A stretch of 61,422 nt of DNA, the filler included, from Platydemus manokwari (Eukaryota), in the NCBI GenBank assembly GCA_037951405.1. It is 5 parts of 5 records of this genome, joined end to end, with 100 filler letters (N's around TTAATTAATTAA, not from the genome) between each part and the next. Parts side by side here need not be neighbours in the genome. Positions count along the whole stretch, not along the records: positions 10,718 to 22,415 come from JBBMOY010513331.1; 4 more parts are not named here. One strand, 5' to 3'. Below are positions 12,551-22,415 of this stretch, piece by piece. Under the pieces are notes generated by a model. That model was not told where the DNA came from, searched no databases, and saw nothing but the letters and a program-made list of their open reading frames with translations. How positions within the stretch are numbered: the first letter of the stretch is position 1; the number at the start of each line of letters is the position of its first letter. Made by a program: the position numbers and the translations under genes.

Positions 12551-13576
12551 ACAATGAAGTTTACAGAAGCTCTGTTGTTTTAGTACAGATTTTATTTCAT
12601 TGATGTCGATGATAATTTATATTTATTATTTCAATCAATATCAGAGTCATTATCTAAACCATATATAATGTTATTATAATAATCAAGTAATGCCTATTTA
12701 TAGTTATCATCTGAGTATCAATTAGTATTAGCTTCTCTAATTTAATCACGTATATTAACCGTAATACCATCATTTATAAATTTTACGCACCGAACACACA
12801 CGTGTACATCGAAATTCATATTCATTCTTTATCCACTCATGAGCAAATGAAATTGGTACATTAATATTTAAATATGTAGTTTCAGTACTAAATATTTATA
12901 TATGAGTCTTTGTTTATTTTAAATAACTTTCAGATATAAAATAATCTCTTGATAAATTTATCCATAAATAGGTTTTGAAAACCTTGAAAACATTTAATAT
13001 TAGATGTGATTAACATTTAATATGTAATTTTAAATATATCATCGACTAACTATTACTGAAACACATATGCCTTTATGTAATAGCTAAACCAAGTTATGGA
13101 TTCAATTTTCATTAAAATTGTAAAAAACTGTCTGTGTGATAATAATGATTCTCTTAAAATGATTAAGATTGTTCTAATTCACATCCATATAACTCATCAA
13201 TAGAGCTATAACATCTACTAAGAACTGCTATTGTTTCAAACCAACTTAGCCAATTATAAATTGAAATTAATATAAGATATTTAATTGACTGGTTTCTTCA
13301 CTGCTGTCAGGATATGTTAAGCAAATATCACAGTTCAAGACAAGGAAAACACTTGCGGTTGACATTTTCTAAAATAAAATCTTTCAAGCACTATTTTAAA
13401 ACAAATCCAGTATTAACGCAAATTATGTAGCTCGATTAGTTGTCGCTCTTTCTCATAGTAACCAGTTTAAATTTTAATTGCTACTCATAAATGGTAATTC
13501 ACGTGAAAACATCTACAATTTTATAAAGTATCATTAACAAATAAATGGATATGATGTTTGTTTTATTCACATTATT

Positions 13577-14735
13577 TTAACAAACAAAAATTTCACAATA
13601 ATCCCATCCTTTCTTATCTGAATTATAACACCAGATTCCTCCAGAATGGCCATCAGTATTTCGACAATAATTATGCGTCAACTCTTTATTATAATCATGG
13701 TTATTTGGAGTACTACCTGACCACTTTTGACAAGGCTTCCCTCTAACATTAGTTGATAATAGACCATCATATTCCCGACCAAGTTTTGTTTTCTTACATC
13801 GATAATCTAGAAATGAATATTTGTCAAATAGTTATCTCCACTATTGTATAAAATCTGAGAATAATTATTTCATAAGCAGTTCTTTAATGAAATAACTCAG
13901 ACATAGTTTGATATCTTCACCACTAAGTGGTGAGTCAAATATCACCGGTTTCTTCTTCGATTAACATATATACGATCTTTGAGTGTCGGACAGACCGTGA
14001 GAATAAGACACATCACACTTGTTAAAGATGTGTGTTTTGTGACTATTTGCACTTCTGATGTCTCATGTACTTCTTGTTCGGTTATGACAAGCTACTTGAG
14101 CAAGCTTTATTTAGGAAAAGTGTTGTAAGTCCAAAAGAAGCAGTAATAGTAGTACCAAACATCAGACCTTGGAGACTTAACCATCAACTTAATTCGTATA
14201 GATGTGAATCAATATAAATATATCTCAACCCTCTTAAATTACACGACTAAAATAATATTTAAAAGAATTCACCAACTTTTATTGACAACCATAACGATAG
14301 GGTTTTCTGAAAAGACATATTTGGTTTCAGAGGTCTTCAAACATATATTGCATGTCAGAGAGAAATTATCATAAAATAGCTGTGTACATTCCGGGTGTTT
14401 CATTTTGCACAGTTCAATACAATCTGTCATAGTTGGAACTTTATGAATATTGGTGGGGTCTTTCAAATCACAATAAGTATATGTTGGAGCAACCGCTACG
14501 TAATCATCGCTTTCTGAAATAATATAAACATGTTTATTATATTTTTAAATTACTTTATATATAATTATATTTAATAATAATTGCTAAAATAAATATTTAT
14601 TATTTATTTAAAAGAGAATTTTTAAAGTTAGTCACAAGAATGATAATAATAACCATCACTATGCTTGATTTCGGAATCAGTTACATAAAACAAACAGTAA
14701 CTCACAAAAACCGATATTAAAAATGAAGAAATCAT
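13577..14735 (-). CDS. Secreted PAN/apple + kringle protein, copy A; exons 14735-14654, 14513-14277, 13806-13577; 182 aa
   Basis: Exon 1 MISSFLISVFVSYCLFYVTDS (signal-peptide-like). Exon 2 has six Cys, C..DCIELC....ECTQLFY.....CNIC (PAN-like). Exon 3 CKKTKLGREYDG..STNVRGKPCQKW...HNYCRNTDGHSGGIWCY......WDYCEIFVC* (kringle). Both introns GT-AG, phase 1; AATAAA after the stop. Confidence 0.9.
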
Positions 14736-15799
14736 TTCGATTTTTTAATAATACGTAAAAATACCACGTTGTTTTTATTATGGACAAGACCATACGAACA
14801 AATTCTGAAATGAATAAGATATCACGAAAATTAAAATTTTTTGAAGTAGCTACTAATCTGAGGAAATCAGAAATGCAAATATAAAACACATTAATTCAGA
14901 TTAAACTTTCACATATATTTTGAAATTATTCTTCTTTATTTAAAAGTTTATTATAATTACTTTTAATATTTATATTATTAATATTAAAATTATATTTGTC
15001 TTTATTATTTGGTTAATGATATTATTTATATAATTATTCAACTTTATGTTATAATGATAAATTATTATAATTATTATTTATTTTATTTTCATAAATAATA
15101 ATTTTAATAAATACTTTATCTAGTTGTAGATAAATTTAGATAAGTACTAAGAAAGCAATAAAAGTAACAAAAATAATAGTCATATAACGGGTGCTATGGA
15201 AACAATCGACAAAATTAGATGAGAGTTCAACAATTACAACAACAGAAATTATAATAATTTCAAACCAAAACGAAATAACAATAATTGGAATTGAAAAAAT
15301 AAAAATATCGGTAAAATGGCTTTTTCAAATCACACTCGAAAGATTTGATTTTTGCTATTTTCACCACTGAAATGCCATATAATTTTATTTTACTTCTAAG
15401 TAGTGTTTACTCCTTATCATATAGTTGGAATAAGTTGTTTGTTGAAGCTATTCTTGGAGCTGTTTCTCGGTTTATTTGTTGATTCCATTATTAATGTTTT
15501 TTGTTTTATTTTAGGTTTTATTTTTATTTTGCTGTTGTGATTTGAAAAAATAGATTTGCAGGTTAGATCTGGGTATCGTGCTTAAGCTGTCAGAAATAGG
15601 TTATGTTTTTTTTGTTTTTTATGAAATTATTTTCACAATTGTTTTGCTCTTTCTATGGCCTCCGTATGGATGTAGAGATCCATTTTCAATTCCTTTGTTG
15701 AACCAGATTATTTGTTGTCTTCTGGTGAGAGAATAACTGCTTGGTATCTTTGTGTTTTGAAAAAATACATACTTAAAACATTACAAAATTGGAGATTCA

Positions 15800-16320
15800 T
15801 CAATCTAAATACCGATCATATGGTGTATTTTAGCCTACTTGGAACCAGCTGATGAAAATGTAATTAGAGCAGCAAAATCTATTATTTCTTCATCTGATTT
15901 AAATCTAAAAGGTATTGAATTTCCAATAGCTATGGAAGAAATTAGAAAGTTTAACAATCAAAGTAATATTAAATTTAATGTTTTTGAAATTGATGAAGAT
16001 CAAAACTTGTTTCATTTGCCTGTTAATCATTATAATCCTAGAGAGTGAATTTCATTATTACATTAAAATCATTATGTATTATGTAAAAATATAAATATAT
16101 TTTCAAATGAAAATTGACATCCTCAAGTCATGTGTTTGAGATCCTTAAATAGGTATTGCTTTGAAACTAATTATTATAACCATACTGATCGATTTCATAA
16201 TCATACACCTAGTAAACCAAAACTTAGAAAAGAAGAATGGTAAACGTTTAAAAAGTATAATCAAAAGAAAAAAATCTCATTTGTAATTTTGATGAATTTC
16301 GAACTTATAATGTACCTACA
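15800..16320 (+). mobile_element. Decayed Polinton/Maverick-like protein-primed DNA polymerase B N-terminal fragment
   Basis: LNLKGIEFPIAMEEIRKFNNQSNIKFNVF, then NHYVLCKNINIF..VMCLRSLN, then FKKYNQKKKISFVILMNFE. These follow the LNFxGIxFP..I.KFE..N.I.INV, HYxxIKN..CxxCL and FKN....PFVIYADFE motif order I recognise from invertebrate Maverick-type PolB. Stops present. Confidence 0.7.
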
Positions 16321-17233
16321 AAACGAACACAAGATGAAACAACTTATATTAATGAATAAAATAAATATCAGTAGGAATTTATATTAAAAGTAATTATGAC
16401 CAATCATATTGAATTATGTGGGGAAAATGTAATCCCCAATTTGTTGATATAAATGATAATGTTAATACAAAACTAGCAAGTATTTGATATAACACAGTTA
16501 AACGAAAATGGGAACAGTGATATATTGTAATGACAAAAGAAAACGAGATCTGAAAATGTATTATCAATTTGTTTATGAATTTGATTTACAATATAGAGTT
16601 AATATTCCCGAAATGAATAAATATTCTCTAGTAAAAAAATTAAATATCTTATAAAATGTTTGCTCATCAACAAAATTCGAAACCTTCTAATGATTTGACA
16701 TGATAATAAGTCTGAATACTAGGAAATAATTTATGTTTTTTTTAGATCAAAGAATGATTTTGAAAAAAAATCAAAAAAATTATTTATGAAAAGTAAATGT
16801 TAGTTAAGAGGTTATGTGGTCTTCAATATTTAATAAAGATCTATAACAAAGCATTATAAGGAAGATATTGAGATTGGAGTTTTTAAATTATTATGGAATT
16901 TATTTTATGTAAAAACAATTGAGATTCAATCCACTTTCTAAATAACTTAATAGGTATATGGGTGAAAAGACATTTATAATTTTAATATTAATAATATAAA
17001 TATTAAAAGTAATTATAATAAAATTTTAAATAAAGAAGAATAATTGCAAATTATATGTGGAAGTTTATTCTGAATTAATGTGTTTCATATTTGCATTTAG
17101 AATTTCCTTACAGCAGTAGCTACTTCAATAAATTTACATTTCGTTCATTTCTTATTCATTTCGAGACTTGTTTCTATGGTTGTTTTTCATATAAAAACCA
17201 CGTGCTATTTTTATAAATCATTAAAAAATCGAC

Positions 17234-19000
17234 ATGATTTCTTCATTGTTAATCTCGGTTTTTGTGAGTTGCTGCTTGTTGTGTGTAACTGATTCCGTAA
17301 AAACGAATAGCGATGGTTATTATTCTTGTAACTAAATTTTAAAATGATTATTTAAATAAATAAATAAATTATTTATTTTAGAAATTATTATTAAATATAA
17401 TTATATATAAATTATTTTTCAAATTTATTAACATGTCTATATCTTTTCAGAAGGCGATGATTACGTAACGGTTACCACAAACTCTACCTATTGCGATTTG
17501 GAAAACCCCACCAATGTGCATAAAGCCAAGAATTTGACAGATTGCATTGAATTGTGCAAATTGAAACATCCGGAGTGTACACAGCTATTTTATGATCAAG
17601 CCAATTTGAAATGCATTCTATGTTTGAAGATGTCTAAAAGCCAACATGTATTTTCAGAAAACCCTTTCGTTATGGTTGTCAATAAAAGTTGGGGAATTCT
17701 TTTAAAAATAATTTATTATTAAAATATTATTGAAATCATTTTAATGAAATAATTTAGGAGGGTTGAGATATATTTATATTGATTATATACATACGGTTTT
17801 ATATTAAGGCATATCGTTTAGTTGGAATTAAGTAGAAATTATTGAAAATATATGCTGATGTAGATAATATGTGATAAAATAATTAAACTATAATAATAAT
17901 TATGTGATATCTACACAGAGTTGTGGAATATTATTTAAATAGTTTCCCAATAGCCATACCAGTGAGTAGCTCGCTTCAATAACAATAATAATTATTATTA
18001 CTATAATTATTTTATCATTATTTTTATTTATTTAATAATAATATTTATTATTTTCAATATCAATATTATTGTAAATATTTTAAAATAATTTTTAAAATCA
18101 ATATATATTATAAATATAAATTATCAATATAATTTGTTGAAATAATAAATAATAATGGATGTTTAACAAAAGCCGAATTCATTATGCTGAATAATGCACG
18201 CTCATGTAGTTTGCCAACACCAGAAAAGATTATATGTGGGGTCAGCAGTGCAGAAAGCCACAAAACACATGTCTTTGCAAAGTGCGATGTGCATCACTCT
18301 CACGTTTGAAATGACACACAAAAATCGTAGATGTTTTGAGCGAATTTATCAATTTCCACACAGAAAATGAGGTCGATGTCGATAAACCTTGTCAATTTCG
18401 TATTCTAGACTACGAATTGACTTGGAAATAGTAAATTGATGGAGACAATCACATACGAAAGTATCAAGTCTAAAATATAGGTATTCTATATGCAATGGCA
18501 TTTGCAACAAAGTAAGGCATCCTTAAGACTAAGAAGCATAATATTACCAGACAACCAAGAAAATATATTGGAAAATGAATTGATATACTGTGAGGATGGC
18601 GAGTTTTTCGAAAATTTGGTTAAGAACTGCTGACAAGTAGAAGAATAAACCAATGAAAATACTATGTCTGAGTTGTTTCGTTATAATTTTGTTCATGAAA
18701 TAAAATTCTCATATTAAAAACAATAGTGGCGACATTTACTGATAACGATTTGACAAATATTCTTTTGTAGAATATCGATGTAAGAAGACAGAACTTGGTC
18801 GGGACTACGTTGGTCTATTATCAACTAATGTAAGAGGAGTGCCTTGTCAAAAGTGGTCAAGTCAAATTCCAAATAAGCATGATTTCAATCAAGACTCGAC
18901 CCATAATTATTGTCGAAATTTCGATACCCATAGTGGTGGAATCTGGTGTTATAATTCAGATACGACGGGATGGGATTATTGTGAAATTTATGTTTGTTAA
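17234..19000 (+). CDS. Secreted PAN/apple + kringle protein, copy B; exons 17234-17315, 17451-17687, 18771-19000; 182 aa
   Basis: Same exon lengths (82/237/230) and phases as copy A. MISSLLISVFVSCCLLCVTDS signal, six-Cys PAN-like exon, kringle CKKTELGRDYVG..GVPCQKW...HNYCRNFDTHSGGIWCY..WDYCEIYVC*. AATAAA about 10 bp after the stop. Confidence 0.9.
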
Positions 19001-21256
19001 AATAATGTGAATAAAGCAAACATCATTTTCATTTATTTATTAATAACGCTTTATAAAATTATAAGTGTTTTCGTGTGAATGTTTTTATTCAATTTAAATG
19101 AAGAGATTCCAATGTCCTGTTGCTCGCTCGAATCTAATATCAATGACAAAATATCGGTTATTACCACCAATTAAAATTAATAAGAGTGACATCTAATCGA
19201 GCTTCATAATTTGAGTTAAAACTGGATTTGTTTTAAAATACTGTTTAAAAAAATTTAATATTAAAAATTAATTCAACCGTATGCGTTTTCCTTCTATTGA
19301 GCTGTGGTATTTTGACGACCAGGCCATAGAAATCAATGCAATAACAGATAATCAGCAGAAGAAACAATTATTAGAGTGTTTGCCGAAATAGACACAAGAA
19401 GCGCTCAGTTATAATTTTGAAAAAAATGATGGGAGAAATTTAAACGAGGCTGCAATTTGGATGCAAGATACAGATGTGTGACTGATCAGCACATTCAATT
19501 GACTGTCTTCAGTAATTTGACTTAGAACAGCTCCGATTACACCCAAACTGGCATTAGTATCGAACATCAATATCCAGTTATCTCTTGACTATACTGTGGT
19601 ACTGGGGCATCTTGTATCAGTTTGATTTTGTCGTAACTTACCTGTACGCTCTTCTGATTCAGATATCAGCTCACAAACTGTTTCACACAGTCTCTCATGC
19701 AATCTCACAATTCATCAATCTTCAATGACGCTCAAATTACAATTTCGAATCTTATAATAATGTCCGGGATTTCGGCATTGAAATTATCTTTTTCTTTTTG
19801 ACTAACAGTCTATGCCCGAATTATTATTCGTTGTCAACAGTGCCATCTACTGTGTTGCAAGAATCTTAACAATAATTCATTTTTCACATTTGACCTCCCA
19901 AATTTTTTTGATCCGTTTGACAATCTCAAGTGTTTTAGAAATTGAAAATCTGTTCTTTGGGTGGTTTTTGTTTGAATGCAATTAATTGCCAAAACTGTGG
20001 AGATTTCAAATGAGTGAAATAAAGATTATGAAATCAGTGTGTTTATTGACATTTTGTTTTTTCTTTTTATGTATGTTTTCTGTTATTTCTTGTTTTCAGA
20101 ATGTTTATTGATTGTTTCCCTTTTTCCTTTATATATTGAGACATTTCCTGTGTGTCATTGTTGTTTCTTTAGAAAGTTTTGGGTCACAAAGCGTTTGATG
20201 TTTTTCAATAATATTTTATCTTTTTGAAATAATTTTGTGGGTTTTATTTCGTCTGTTGGCTTTGGTGTTGGTTTCTCTTTGATAGAGATTTTCATTTGTT
20301 TTTTGACTTTTTATTTGTGATTACCTGTGAAAATTACTTCAGATTATTTTATTTTATTATTATTATTGATTGACAATGATTGTTGTCTTTGTTTTGTGTT
20401 AAAAATGGTTTTAATTATAAAAAATTTTGACGTGATGTAATGAATGATTTTATCTTTTATTTATGATCTAAATGAATTCTGTATTTCTCAATTATCGGAT
20501 TATAAAATAAAATGAAGTTTTGATAACTCAGAAGCTGTACGACAGTTTATTTACAAGATTTTCTTTTCATTGAAAATTTTAACTGTACCAAGATAGCAAA
20601 ATTATTTGTGTAATAATTTGAGAATTGTTTGAATGAATCGAAATTATTGATATGGTTTGATGTATGATTTTGTTTTGATTGTTCAAAAATTTTCAAATTT
20701 TCAGTCTTTTTGAAATAGCTTTAAAGATTTTACGGATTCTGAAACTTTGTTTATTAATAACATCGTAATGGTATTTATGAGTTTTTATCGAAAATATTTT
20801 AATGTTGGAGTTATTGCGTTTAAATACCGTTTAAGAAATAAAATTATAGGGCGATTTGAGTTTAAACCGTTATGAATCATGTTGGTTTTTATATAATATA
20901 TTAAAGATTGCACATAAGGAATTTAATTTAGAGATTTAAAGTGGCAGAAAACTAATTCTTGTTTGTAAATACAATTGCAAATTTAGAAAATTGCAATTCA
21001 CATTTTATGTAATTATTTGTTTAAATACATCAATTCAAGAAACAGTATTGCAATTGAGATTTGCAATTGTATGACGTTGAAAAGAATATTATTATTTATA
21101 TTGAAAAATAAAAAATTTATTTCTTATATCTAATAATCTCAATAAATTTTTAATACTTTAATATTATTTTCGACCAATGAGGTTACAGATAAATACTATT
21201 AATTAAAAATTTTATTTTATTTAATTCATTTTAATAGATTTATTAAATAAATCAAA

Positions 21257-21853
21257 ATGGTGATTGAAAATACTAAAATCGATATCGATATCAAATTAAA
21301 AGCCATTCAAATGTTCAATGATGGAATCGATTTAGATGAAATCAGTAAACAAATCGGTTATGGACCCAATACAATACGATATTGGATTGGTCGAAGCCAG
21401 AAACATATAACAGCATCTCTAGGAGTGAAAAAATACCAAAATATATCAATTTCTAAAAAACTTGAGATTGTTCAACTGATACGAGAAGGTTCGAACATCT
21501 ATAATATTGAACGTCGATACAATATCGACAGACAAACAATCAAGCTTTGGATTAAAAAAGGAAAGAAATTAATAGAAAAGAACATGAGACCGATGAATAT
21601 CACTTCATCAGATAAAATATCTGATTGCACAGAAGAGATGAGAAATCGTTGTCAAATGAAAGATGACAGAATAGAGTCATCATCAAATGATAATATTGAT
21701 GAGAATATCAACACAAATAATCTCAATGAAAATGTCACAATGAATGATGAGCCTGAATTGTTAAATATTGATTATAATTCACTATTTGAGAATATGTCAT
21801 TGGTGGAAGATCATTTGAAGAATCTAATAAATCTTCTTCAATTCGACAATTAA
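21257..21853 (+). CDS. Intronless 198-aa protein with two tandem psq/CENP-B-N-like HTH domains and an acidic Asn-rich tail (pogo/Tigger transposase-related, no DDE domain)
   Basis: IDIDIKLKAIQMFNDG...EISKQIGYGPNTIRYW and ISISKKLEIVQLIREG...IERRYNIDRQTIKLWIK fit the xSxxxKLEII...G.S...IAxxYGIxxSTIxxW pattern. AAAATG start and AATAAA about 16 bp after the stop. Confidence 0.7.
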   Translation: MVIENTKIDIDIKLKAIQMFNDGIDLDEISKQIGYGPNTIRYWIGRSQKHITASLGVKKYQNISISKKLEIVQLIREGSNIYNIERRYNIDRQTIKLWIKKGKKLIEKNMRPMNITSSDKISDCTEEMRNRCQMKDDRIESSSNDNIDENINTNNLNENVTMNDEPELLNIDYNSLFENMSLVEDHLKNLINLLQFDN

Positions 21854-22161
21854 AATTTGTTTGAATGAAATAAACGATTTATAGAGATCACATGGAGTCC
21901 CTCATATTGATCGAGGTGAGTAGTTGGTTTTCTTGTTAATAAATCTAATTGATTTAAATATTATTTATTTAATTATCAATAGTTAATTAATAAATTAATT
22001 AAATAAATCACTGATATTGATTTAAATCGTTTAAAATATTTAAGAATTTATAAATATATTTGTTAATAATAATTATTATTATTGATTTGGTAATATTTCA
22101 TTAAATATCTATAAAACATAACAGATGAGTGTGAAACTTGTTTTAATTGATATATCAATTA

Positions 22162-22415
22162 AATGATGGAATCGATTTAGATGAAATTAGTAAACAAATC
22201 GGTTATGGACCCAATACAATACGATATTGGATTGGTCGAAGCCAGAAACATATAACAGCATCTCTAGGAGTGAAAAAATACCAAAATATATCAATTTCTA
22301 AAAAACTTGAGATTGTTCAACTGATACGAGAAGGTTCGAACATCTATAATATTGAACGTCGATACAATATCGACAGACAAACAATCAAGCTTTGGATTAA
22401 AAAAGGAAAGAAATT
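22162..22415 (+). pseudogene. 5'-truncated near-identical second copy of the twin-HTH ORF, running into the gap
   Basis: Matches about 21317-21570 with one synonymous change seen (atc/att) and lacks the first 20 codons; could be an assembly duplicate. Confidence 0.7.

What the first reader, a model, noticed from the sequence alone, without database searches (positions are those of the whole stretch)
13577..19000. Head-to-head pair of stand-alone secreted PAN+kringle mini-proteins with the HGF-NK1 architecture
Seen: two intact 3-exon genes, one module per exon (signal peptide | PAN-like six-Cys domain | kringle), with phase-1 introns and a stop right after the last kringle Cys followed by AATAAA. 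The ORF track shows only the middle exon. Established: PAN followed by kringle is the N-terminus of plasminogen, HGF and MSP, and NK1 (PAN + kringle 1) is a natural HGF splice form that binds MET; in vertebrates it is not a separate gene. Inference: these are protease-less secreted ligands or binding proteins, either a minimal HGF-like signalling module in a regenerating flatworm or a convergent exon-shuffled product (mucus, defence or prey handling). I cannot tell from sequence whether they are already described; they may be loosely annotated as plasminogen-like.
Basis: partly seen in the sequence, partly recalled or inferred. Interest (0 to 1): 0.85.

Follow-up and report, generated by a model that had tools for sequence, protein, structure and literature searches.

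The report
Paired secreted PAN-plus-kringle mini-protein genes
Two neighbouring mirror-image gene copies each encode a small secreted protein made of one PAN/apple domain and one kringle domain, the same layout as the start of plasminogen and HGF, but they look like fast-evolving lineage-specific binding proteins, not a growth factor, and no RNA data were available to confirm the splicing.

Summary
Each encodes 182 aa: a hydrophobic signal-like N-terminus, a six-Cys module and a kringle. TAA follows directly after the last kringle Cys, and AATAAA lies 10 nt further on. The two genes are the arms of an inverted duplication.

The kringle is certain (Pfam 54-56 bits, cut-off 34.3). The middle exon falls just under the Pfam PAN_1 cut-off. 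It nevertheless models as a PAN/apple fold, and all 24 best matches in an exhaustive PDB comparison are PAN/apple-type domains, led by plasminogen PAp, leech antiplatelet protein and HGF N.

Keeping both frames open and all 12 mature Cys through 90 substitutions is very unlikely under neutral change (simulated P about 5e-5), so these are selected genes. Constraint is weak, though: dN/dS is 0.59 and changes fall evenly across codon positions.

Nothing links them specifically to HGF or plasminogen. The PAN module's only sequence-level affinities are weak hits to apicomplexan apple domains, and three of the four charged lysine-site residues of the kringle are replaced.

One unnamed database protein has the same PAN-kringle layout and ends one residue after the last kringle Cys. 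Another is PAN-PAN. No RNA data were available, so splicing is untested by transcripts.

The parts
14654..14735 (-). Gene A exon 1: ATG plus a hydrophobic signal-peptide-like segment (27 codons + 1 nt)
   Evidence: GT donor after 14654. In-frame TAA four codons upstream of the ATG. Kyte-Doolittle means of 1.9-2.4 over the first 17 or so residues.
14277..14513 (-). Gene A exon 2: PAN/apple-like six-Cys module, a phase 1-1 exon of 237 nt
   Evidence: Pfam PAN_1 20.7 bits (cut-off 21.4). 67% aa identity to the gene B exon, whose model has a PAN fold.
13577..13806 (-). Gene A exon 3: kringle, with TAA directly after the last Cys
   Evidence: Pfam Kringle 56 bits (cut-off 34.3). Frame confirmed.
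13562..13567 (-). Gene A AATAAA, 10 nt after the stop
17234..17315 (+). Gene B exon 1: ATG plus a signal-peptide-like segment
   Evidence: TATAAAA at 17190-17196 upstream (read).
17451..17687 (+). Gene B exon 2: PAN/apple-like six-Cys module, a phase 1-1 exon of 237 nt
   Evidence: Pfam PAN_1 19.7 bits. AF2 model with pLDDT 77. Best structural matches: plasminogen PAp Z 7.8, LAPP Z 7.1, HGF N Z 7.0, with the first unrelated fold at Z 3.6. Language-model neighbours are PAN clusters at 0.94.
18771..19000 (+). Gene B exon 3: kringle, with TAA directly after the last Cys
   Evidence: Pfam Kringle 54 bits. phmmer against PDB: plasminogen K1 1.2e-12, HGF K1 about 2e-11.
19010..19015 (+). Gene B AATAAA, 10 nt after the stop
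13364..15003 (-). Left arm of the inverted duplication: gene A with introns, about 270 nt upstream and about 210 nt downstream
   Evidence: repeats I1-I9, 71-88% complementary.
16966..19268 (+). Right arm of the inverted duplication: gene B. Its intron 2 is 1083 nt against 470 nt in gene A and includes an AT-rich repeat.

Best explanation
Two real, divergently transcribed paralogous genes, the arms of an inverted duplication. Each encodes a secreted protein of about 161 aa after signal cleavage, made of one PAN/apple module and one kringle and nothing else. Shown: intact three-exon frames with one module per exon; the kringle family; the PAN fold; and selection for an open frame and for all disulfide cysteines. 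Inferred: they act outside the cell as non-catalytic binding proteins for carbohydrate or protein ligands, in mucus, matrix, adhesion or defence. They belong to a small, fast-evolving, lineage-restricted family built by shuffling phase-1 PAN and kringle exons. The kringle keeps its aromatic groove and one Asp but has lost the charge pairs of the classical lysine-binding site, so its ligand is probably not a C-terminal lysine. The resemblance to HGF NK1 is one of architecture, not a demonstrated orthology.
For: Splice sites, phases and frames come. Pfam gives kringle at 54-56 bits and PAN_1 at 19.7-20.7 bits. The PAN fold rests: all matches with Z of 3.8 or more are PAN/apple/WSC/MANEC/AMA1-type, and the best covers 75 of 78 residues. 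Atlas features agree. The inverted duplication includes introns and flanks. In a neutral simulation, P(no stop and all 12 mature Cys kept after 90 substitutions) is 5e-5. P(no indel in 549 nt) is 0.03, taken from the indel rate of the aligned non-coding parts. dN/dS is 0.59, dS is 0.28, and differences by codon position are 29/28/33. P0003, an independent database protein of 171 aa, is 39% identical to gene B over 148 aa. It has the same PAN-to-kringle junction and ends one residue after the last kringle Cys. P0001 is signal + PAN + PAN. No kringle or protease was found in other ORFs of the piece. From the alignment to plasminogen K1, with the lysine-site positions taken from memory: D55 is kept, D57 is H, R35 is D and R71 is G in both copies.
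Against: There is no transcript evidence at all. PAN_1 is below Pfam's curated cut-off. The structural Z scores of 7-8 are middling in absolute terms. The signal peptide is judged by eye and hydropathy only. The function is inferred from domain content and evolutionary rate alone. Weak constraint (dN/dS 0.59) is also compatible with recently relaxed selection on one copy. The organism is not disclosed, and the databases hold almost no relatives, so family size and distribution are unknown.
Confidence: 0.7

Rival explanations
1. They are protostome descendants of the ancestral plasminogen/HGF PAN-kringle unit. They act like NK1, as a dimerising ligand for a Sema/PSI-type receptor (MET- or plexin-like), for example in wound signalling.
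For: Same module order, with an equally short PAN-to-kringle linker. Model residues 1-78 align to plasminogen 1-79, and the first kringle Cys follows 4 residues later. The best single matches for both modules are plasminogen PAp (Z 7.8) and plasminogen K1. The nearest named Atlas clusters for the relative P0003 are chordate Kringle/PAN, plasminogen and a 174-aa HGF cluster (0.91-0.93). A planarian gene named plasminogen-1 is wound-induced (PMC10560571, PMC8602322), but I could not link it to this locus.
Against: The PAN exon has no sequence-level hit to HGF or plasminogen. Its weak hits are to apicomplexan MIC4/SML-2 apple domains. Structural scores for plasminogen, LAPP, HGF, plant SRK and MIC4 are tied within 1 Z unit. 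Kringle scores for plasminogen, apo(a), HGF and ROR2 lie within about 8 bits of each other. dN/dS is 0.59 with evenly spread changes, and a PAN-PAN relative exists. No MET orthologue is known to me in protostomes (from memory, not tested).
Confidence: 0.1
2. One or both copies are untranscribed or decaying duplicates (young pseudogenes) that still look intact.
For: No RNA evidence. Exon nucleotide identity (84%) is no higher than in intron 1 or the promoter region (80-84%). Codon-position differences are 29/28/33. The genes are surrounded by transposon remnants.
Against: Both frames are open and indel-free, and all 12 mature Cys are kept: simulated P is 5e-5, times 0.03 for indels. Splice sites, start context, stop and AATAAA are retained in both copies. 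pN (0.148) is below pS (0.234).
Confidence: 0.08
3. The three exons are part of a larger gene, with further PAN, kringle or protease exons outside the piece or missed in it.
For: The relative P0001 has two PAN modules, and its second PAN is 88% identical to the PAN of P0003. A signal-PAN-PAN-kringle form may therefore exist in the family. The piece is only 11.7 kb.
Against: An in-frame TAA lies four codons upstream of each ATG, with no AG in between. TAA directly after the kringle, followed by AATAAA, is conserved in both copies despite 16% divergence. tblastn finds no further PAN or kringle copy in the piece. Pfam finds nothing relevant in the other ORFs. The genes point away from each other, so neither can continue into the other.
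Confidence: 0.07

Closest known systems
HGF/SF NK1 (N domain + kringle 1; PDB 1NK1, 1BHT, 7MOB)
   Same: Signal peptide, one PAN-type domain, a short linker and one kringle, with similar size (182-aa precursor). The PAN model aligns to HGF residues 40-123 with Z 7.0-7.4. The kringle scores 2e-11 against NK1 chains.
   Different: NK1 is a splice form of a six-domain gene; here it is a whole gene with one module per exon. There is no sequence-level PAN similarity to HGF. The PAN module has six Cys with a C-x2-C pair. The kringle is about 6 residues shorter. The genes evolve fast. No receptor is known.
Plasminogen PAp domain + kringle 1 (PDB 4A5T, 4DUR)
   Same: Best structural match of the PAN exon: Z 7.8, 75 residues, model 1-78 to plasminogen 1-79. 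Best sequence match of the kringle: K1, 51 bits as a single domain. The first 162 plasminogen residues are almost collinear with the mature protein here.
   Different: There are no further kringles and no protease. Lysine-site residues D57, R35 and R71 are replaced by H, D and G. 16% identity in the PAN module.
Invertebrate and protist stand-alone PAN/apple proteins (leech antiplatelet protein 1I8N; Sarcocystis SML-2 2YIL; Toxoplasma MIC4 apple domains)
   Same: Small secreted PAN modules used as binding domains for collagen or galactose. LAPP gives Z 7.1, SML-2 Z 6.5 and MIC4-A5 Z 6.7. The only sequence-level PDB hits of the PAN profile are MIC4 (E 0.034) and SML-2 (E 0.71).
   Different: None of them carries a kringle. 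The similarity is at fold or motif level only.
Flatworm kringle protein Tmed-krg1 (PMC9229212)
   Same: A flatworm extracellular kringle protein proposed to bind lysine-rich adhesive proteins. It shows that kringles are used for adhesion in flatworms.
   Different: 1367 aa, membrane-bound, six kringles, no PAN. No sequence was compared here.

Membership tests
Kringle domain (Pfam PF00051) | Profile score above the curated cut-off | tested here: met
   54.0 and 56.0 bits against a cut-off of 34.3, covering profile positions 4-79 of 79.
Kringle domain (Pfam PF00051) | Six cysteines in the canonical kringle positions | tested here: met
   Precursor Cys 110, 132, 154, 166, 177 and 182. In the plasminogen K1 alignment, which starts just after the first Cys (C84), the other five align with C105, C133, C145, C157 and C162.
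Kringle domain (Pfam PF00051) | Classical lysine-binding site (two Asp, two basic residues, aromatic groove) | tested here: not met
   From the alignment: D55, W62 and Y64 are kept and Y72 is W, but D57 is H, R35 is D and R71 is G in both copies. The residue roles are recalled from the plasminogen literature.
PAN/apple domain (Pfam PF00024 PAN_1) | Profile score above the curated cut-off | tested here: not met
   19.7 and 20.7 bits against a cut-off of 21.4; E 4e-4 to 8e-4.
PAN/apple domain (Pfam PF00024 PAN_1) | PAN fold: a central helix packed on a curved antiparallel sheet | tested here: met
   Model with pLDDT 77, one helix (28-38) and seven strands. In an exhaustive comparison with 48,161 chains, ranks 1-24 are all PAN/apple-type (Z 7.8 down to 3.8), and the first unrelated fold is at Z 3.6.
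PAN/apple domain (Pfam PF00024 PAN_1) | Core four-Cys pattern C-x3-C-x6-C-x11-C | tested here: met
   Exon-2 residues C31, C35, C42 and C54 are invariant in all five family modules, with two extra Cys (C14, C57). The disulfide pairing itself was not tested.
Plasminogen-related growth factors (plasminogen, HGF, MSP) | N-terminal PAN directly followed by a kringle | tested here: met
Plasminogen-related growth factors (plasminogen, HGF, MSP) | Four or five kringles and a C-terminal serine-protease(-like) domain | tested here: not met
   The stop follows the single kringle in both copies. No other kringle or protease ORF lies in the piece.
Plasminogen-related growth factors (plasminogen, HGF, MSP) | Both modules group with the family in a phylogeny (orthology) | not tested
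Score ranking alone does not discriminate.
HGF NK1-type MET ligand | Binds and activates a MET-type receptor; heparin-dependent dimer | not testable with these tools
   No receptor candidate from this genome was available.

The most novel reading that the evidence does not exclude
The PAN-kringle pair is an ancient bilaterian unit. These stand-alone genes would then be the protostome counterpart of the plasminogen/HGF N-terminus, working as an NK1-like secreted ligand, possibly wound-induced, for a Sema/PSI-domain receptor. That would place the origin of HGF-type signalling before vertebrates.
Probability: 0.08. Interest if true: 0.85.

Novelty: new variant of a known kind. Interest (0 to 1): 0.5.

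Why it matters
PAN followed by kringle is the hallmark of the plasminogen/HGF/MSP family. In the large Atlas clusters searched here, that combination appeared only in chordates. A stand-alone PAN + one-kringle gene in an invertebrate, present as a selected and duplicated family, bears on how that family was assembled. It is either an independent exon-shuffling event that reached the same design, or a relic of the ancestral unit. It also offers a compact, disulfide-rich two-module scaffold with an altered kringle pocket whose ligand is unknown. If the animal is a planarian, expression and knock-down tests are routine.

Tried and rejected
- The RNA search found no RNA run. The single holder, X1, is genomic contigs that run through the introns and show no joints at the splice sites.
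- The word-index protein search with the PAN exon found nothing.
- The exhaustive HMMER search of 1.84 billion representatives with the PAN profile gave one true relative, P0001, and one spurious repeat protein, P0002.
- Searches with P0001 and P0003 returned only each other.
- P0001 has no encoding contig on record. Cluster look-ups gave only unnamed UniParc ids, so the source organism of the relatives is unknown.
- The two-domain AF2 model of P0003 failed (pLDDT 41) and was not used. The PAN-kringle interdomain geometry therefore could not be compared with NK1.
- The metagenome scan with PAN patterns found no relative.
- Literature searches found no paper on PAN-kringle mini-proteins in flatworms. 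The paper that first named planarian plasminogen-1 is not held.
- The full 182-aa spliced proteins could not be passed to the search and fold tools, because they have no single reference. The domains were analysed exon by exon.
- I could not verify that the organism is a flatworm.
Full report
**What is there.**
- Gene A lies on the minus strand, with exons 14735-14654, 14513-14277 and 13806-13577.
- Gene B lies on the plus strand, with exons 17234-17315, 17451-17687 and 18771-19000.
- Every intron begins with GT and ends with AG.
- Both joined sequences are 549 nt and read 182 codons plus TAA.
- Exon lengths are 82, 237 and 230 nt in both genes. Both introns are therefore phase 1, and the middle exon is a symmetric 1-1 exon.
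- The stop follows the last kringle Cys at once, and AATAAA starts 10 nt later in both genes (19010; 13567 on the minus strand).
- Four codons upstream of each ATG there is an in-frame TAA with no AG in between. Gene B has TATAAAA at 17190-17196 (read).
- The ATGs are 2.5 kb apart and the genes point away from each other.

**The duplication.** The two genes are the arms of an inverted duplication, roughly 13364-15003 and 16966-19268. It includes about 270 nt upstream, both introns and the 3' flanks, at 71-88% identity. Intron 2 is 470 nt in gene A and 1083 nt in gene B.

**Are they genes or chance frames?**
- The copies differ at 90 of 549 coding positions and 51 of 182 residues.
- The aligned non-coding parts differ at 16% and carry 3 indel events in 481 nt. 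The coding parts carry none.
- I placed 90 substitutions at random on gene A, using the non-coding substitution spectrum. The frame stayed open in 0.6% of trials, all 12 mature Cys were kept in 0.3%, and both held in 0.005%. The indel-free probability is a further 0.03.
- So selection has kept both copies intact for most of their divergence.
- Constraint is weak otherwise. dN/dS is 0.59 and dS is 0.28, with similar values in the signal, PAN and kringle parts. Differences are spread 29/28/33 over the three codon positions.

**No transcript evidence.** The run search listed no RNA run. The single holder is genomic: its contigs cross exon-intron borders without change (for example 17461-17752 and 18568-18797), and no joint sits at a splice site.

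**The modules.**
- Exon 3 is a kringle. Pfam gives 54 and 56 bits against a cut-off of 34.3.
- Among solved structures, single-domain chains score 51 bits for plasminogen K1, 48 for K5, 47.5 for apo(a) KIV, 47 for HGF K1 and 43 for ROR2. The kringle is therefore typical but not assignable to one lineage.
- In the alignment to plasminogen K1, a six-residue loop segment is absent. Of the lysine-site residues, whose roles I recall from the literature, D55, W62 and Y64 are kept and Y72 is W. D57 is H, R35 is D and R71 is G in both copies.
- Exon 2 scores 19.7 and 20.7 bits for PAN_1, just under the 21.4 cut-off. It has no significant sequence hit in the PDB.
- A five-sequence family profile hits only apicomplexan apple domains weakly: MIC4 at E 0.034 and SML-2 at E 0.71.
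- The AlphaFold2 model of gene B's exon 2 has pLDDT 77 and pTM 0.66.
- Foldseek returns PAN/apple domains almost throughout, at TM 0.57-0.67 for the closest.
- The exhaustive VIA comparison with 48,161 chains puts plasminogen PAp first (Z 7.8, 75 residues, 3.2 A, model 1-78 on plasminogen 1-79). Next come leech antiplatelet protein (7.1), HGF N (7.0), a plant receptor complex chain (PDB 5GYY; I take it to be an S-locus receptor kinase PAN domain) (6.9), MIC4-A5 (6.7), SML-2 (6.5) and factor XI/kallikrein apple domains (6.0-6.3).
- In that comparison, ranks 1-24 are all PAN/apple/WSC/MANEC/AMA1-type, and the first unrelated fold has Z 3.6.
- Language-model and shape searches of the ESM Atlas agree on PAN.
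- The four core Cys (C31, C35, C42, C54 of the exon) fit the PAN pattern. Two more (C14, C57) are invariant in the family.
- The N-terminal exon is hydrophobic and ends in T-D-S. I read this as a signal peptide, by eye and hydropathy only.

**Relatives.** The exhaustive profile search of 1.84 billion representatives gave one true relative, P0001 (184 aa: signal, PAN, PAN). Through it I found P0003, a 171-aa fragment with PAN plus kringle.
- P0003 is 39% identical to gene B over 148 residues.
- It has the same PAN-to-kringle junction.
- It ends one residue after the last kringle Cys.

Both are unnamed UniParc entries. The second PAN of P0001 is 88% identical to the PAN of P0003, so the family contains different module combinations. 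For P0003, the nearest named Atlas clusters are chordate Kringle/PAN, plasminogen and a 174-aa HGF cluster (0.91-0.93). That is a resemblance of architecture.

**Interpretation.** The most economical reading is a small, fast-evolving, lineage-restricted family of secreted non-catalytic binding proteins, built from phase-1 PAN and kringle exons. Precedents:
- PAN modules fused to C-type lectins and ficolins in molluscs.
- The PAN-only leech antiplatelet protein.
- A kringle joined to a MACPF domain in an annelid (PMC2762978).
- A six-kringle adhesion protein in a flatworm (PMC9229212).

The HGF-like signalling reading is not excluded but has no specific support. It remains attractive for two reasons. 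The mature protein is nearly collinear with plasminogen residues 1-162. Planarians also have a wound-induced gene called plasminogen-1 (PMC10560571, PMC8602322), whose sequence I could not compare.

**Limits.**
- There is no RNA evidence.
- The organism was not disclosed.
- The full-length proteins could not be submitted to the fold or search tools.
- The two-domain model of P0003 failed (pLDDT 41).
- No phylogeny was built.

Noticed in passing
window 21257-21853 (+) and 22147-22415 (+): A 198-aa ORF with two helix-turn-helix domains (HTH_23 3.9e-09, HTH_28, CENP-B_N), like the DNA-binding end of a Tc1/mariner/pogo-type transposase, with no catalytic domain in the ORF. A near-identical second copy starts about 890 nt downstream and is cut by the edge of the piece.
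   Followed up: partly
window 19412-19570 (-): A short ORF with a weak RT_RNaseH_2 match (E 0.028, below the cut-off). It is probably a decayed retroelement remnant just downstream of gene B.
   Followed up: partly
window 17862-18055: An AT-rich low-complexity stretch inside intron 2 of gene B has a very high word depth in the DNA run (9393, against about 50-200 nearby), with many loose ends. Such repeat insertions account for part of the intron size difference, 1083 against 470 nt.
   Followed up: no
window 15340-16503: Three bins of the spacer between the two genes have word depths of 836-1400, which suggests interspersed repeats. A 69-aa ORF at 15839-16048 has no Pfam match.
   Followed up: no
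window 13499/19103 and 13838/18730: Contigs of the DNA run join the two arms on opposite strands. This is probably assembly-graph switching between the inverted paralogues, or possibly a further arrangement or copy.
   Followed up: no
P0001 and P0003 (database proteins, not in the window): P0001 (signal-PAN-PAN) and P0003 (PAN-kringle fragment) share an 88% identical PAN module. They may be close paralogues or partial models of a signal-PAN-PAN-kringle gene. All family PAN modules share an invariant C-x2-C-L motif.
   Followed up: partly
gene B residues 38 and 55; gene A residue 77: The N-glycosylation sequons differ between the copies: two in gene B's PAN module, and one at a different place in gene A.
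   Followed up: no
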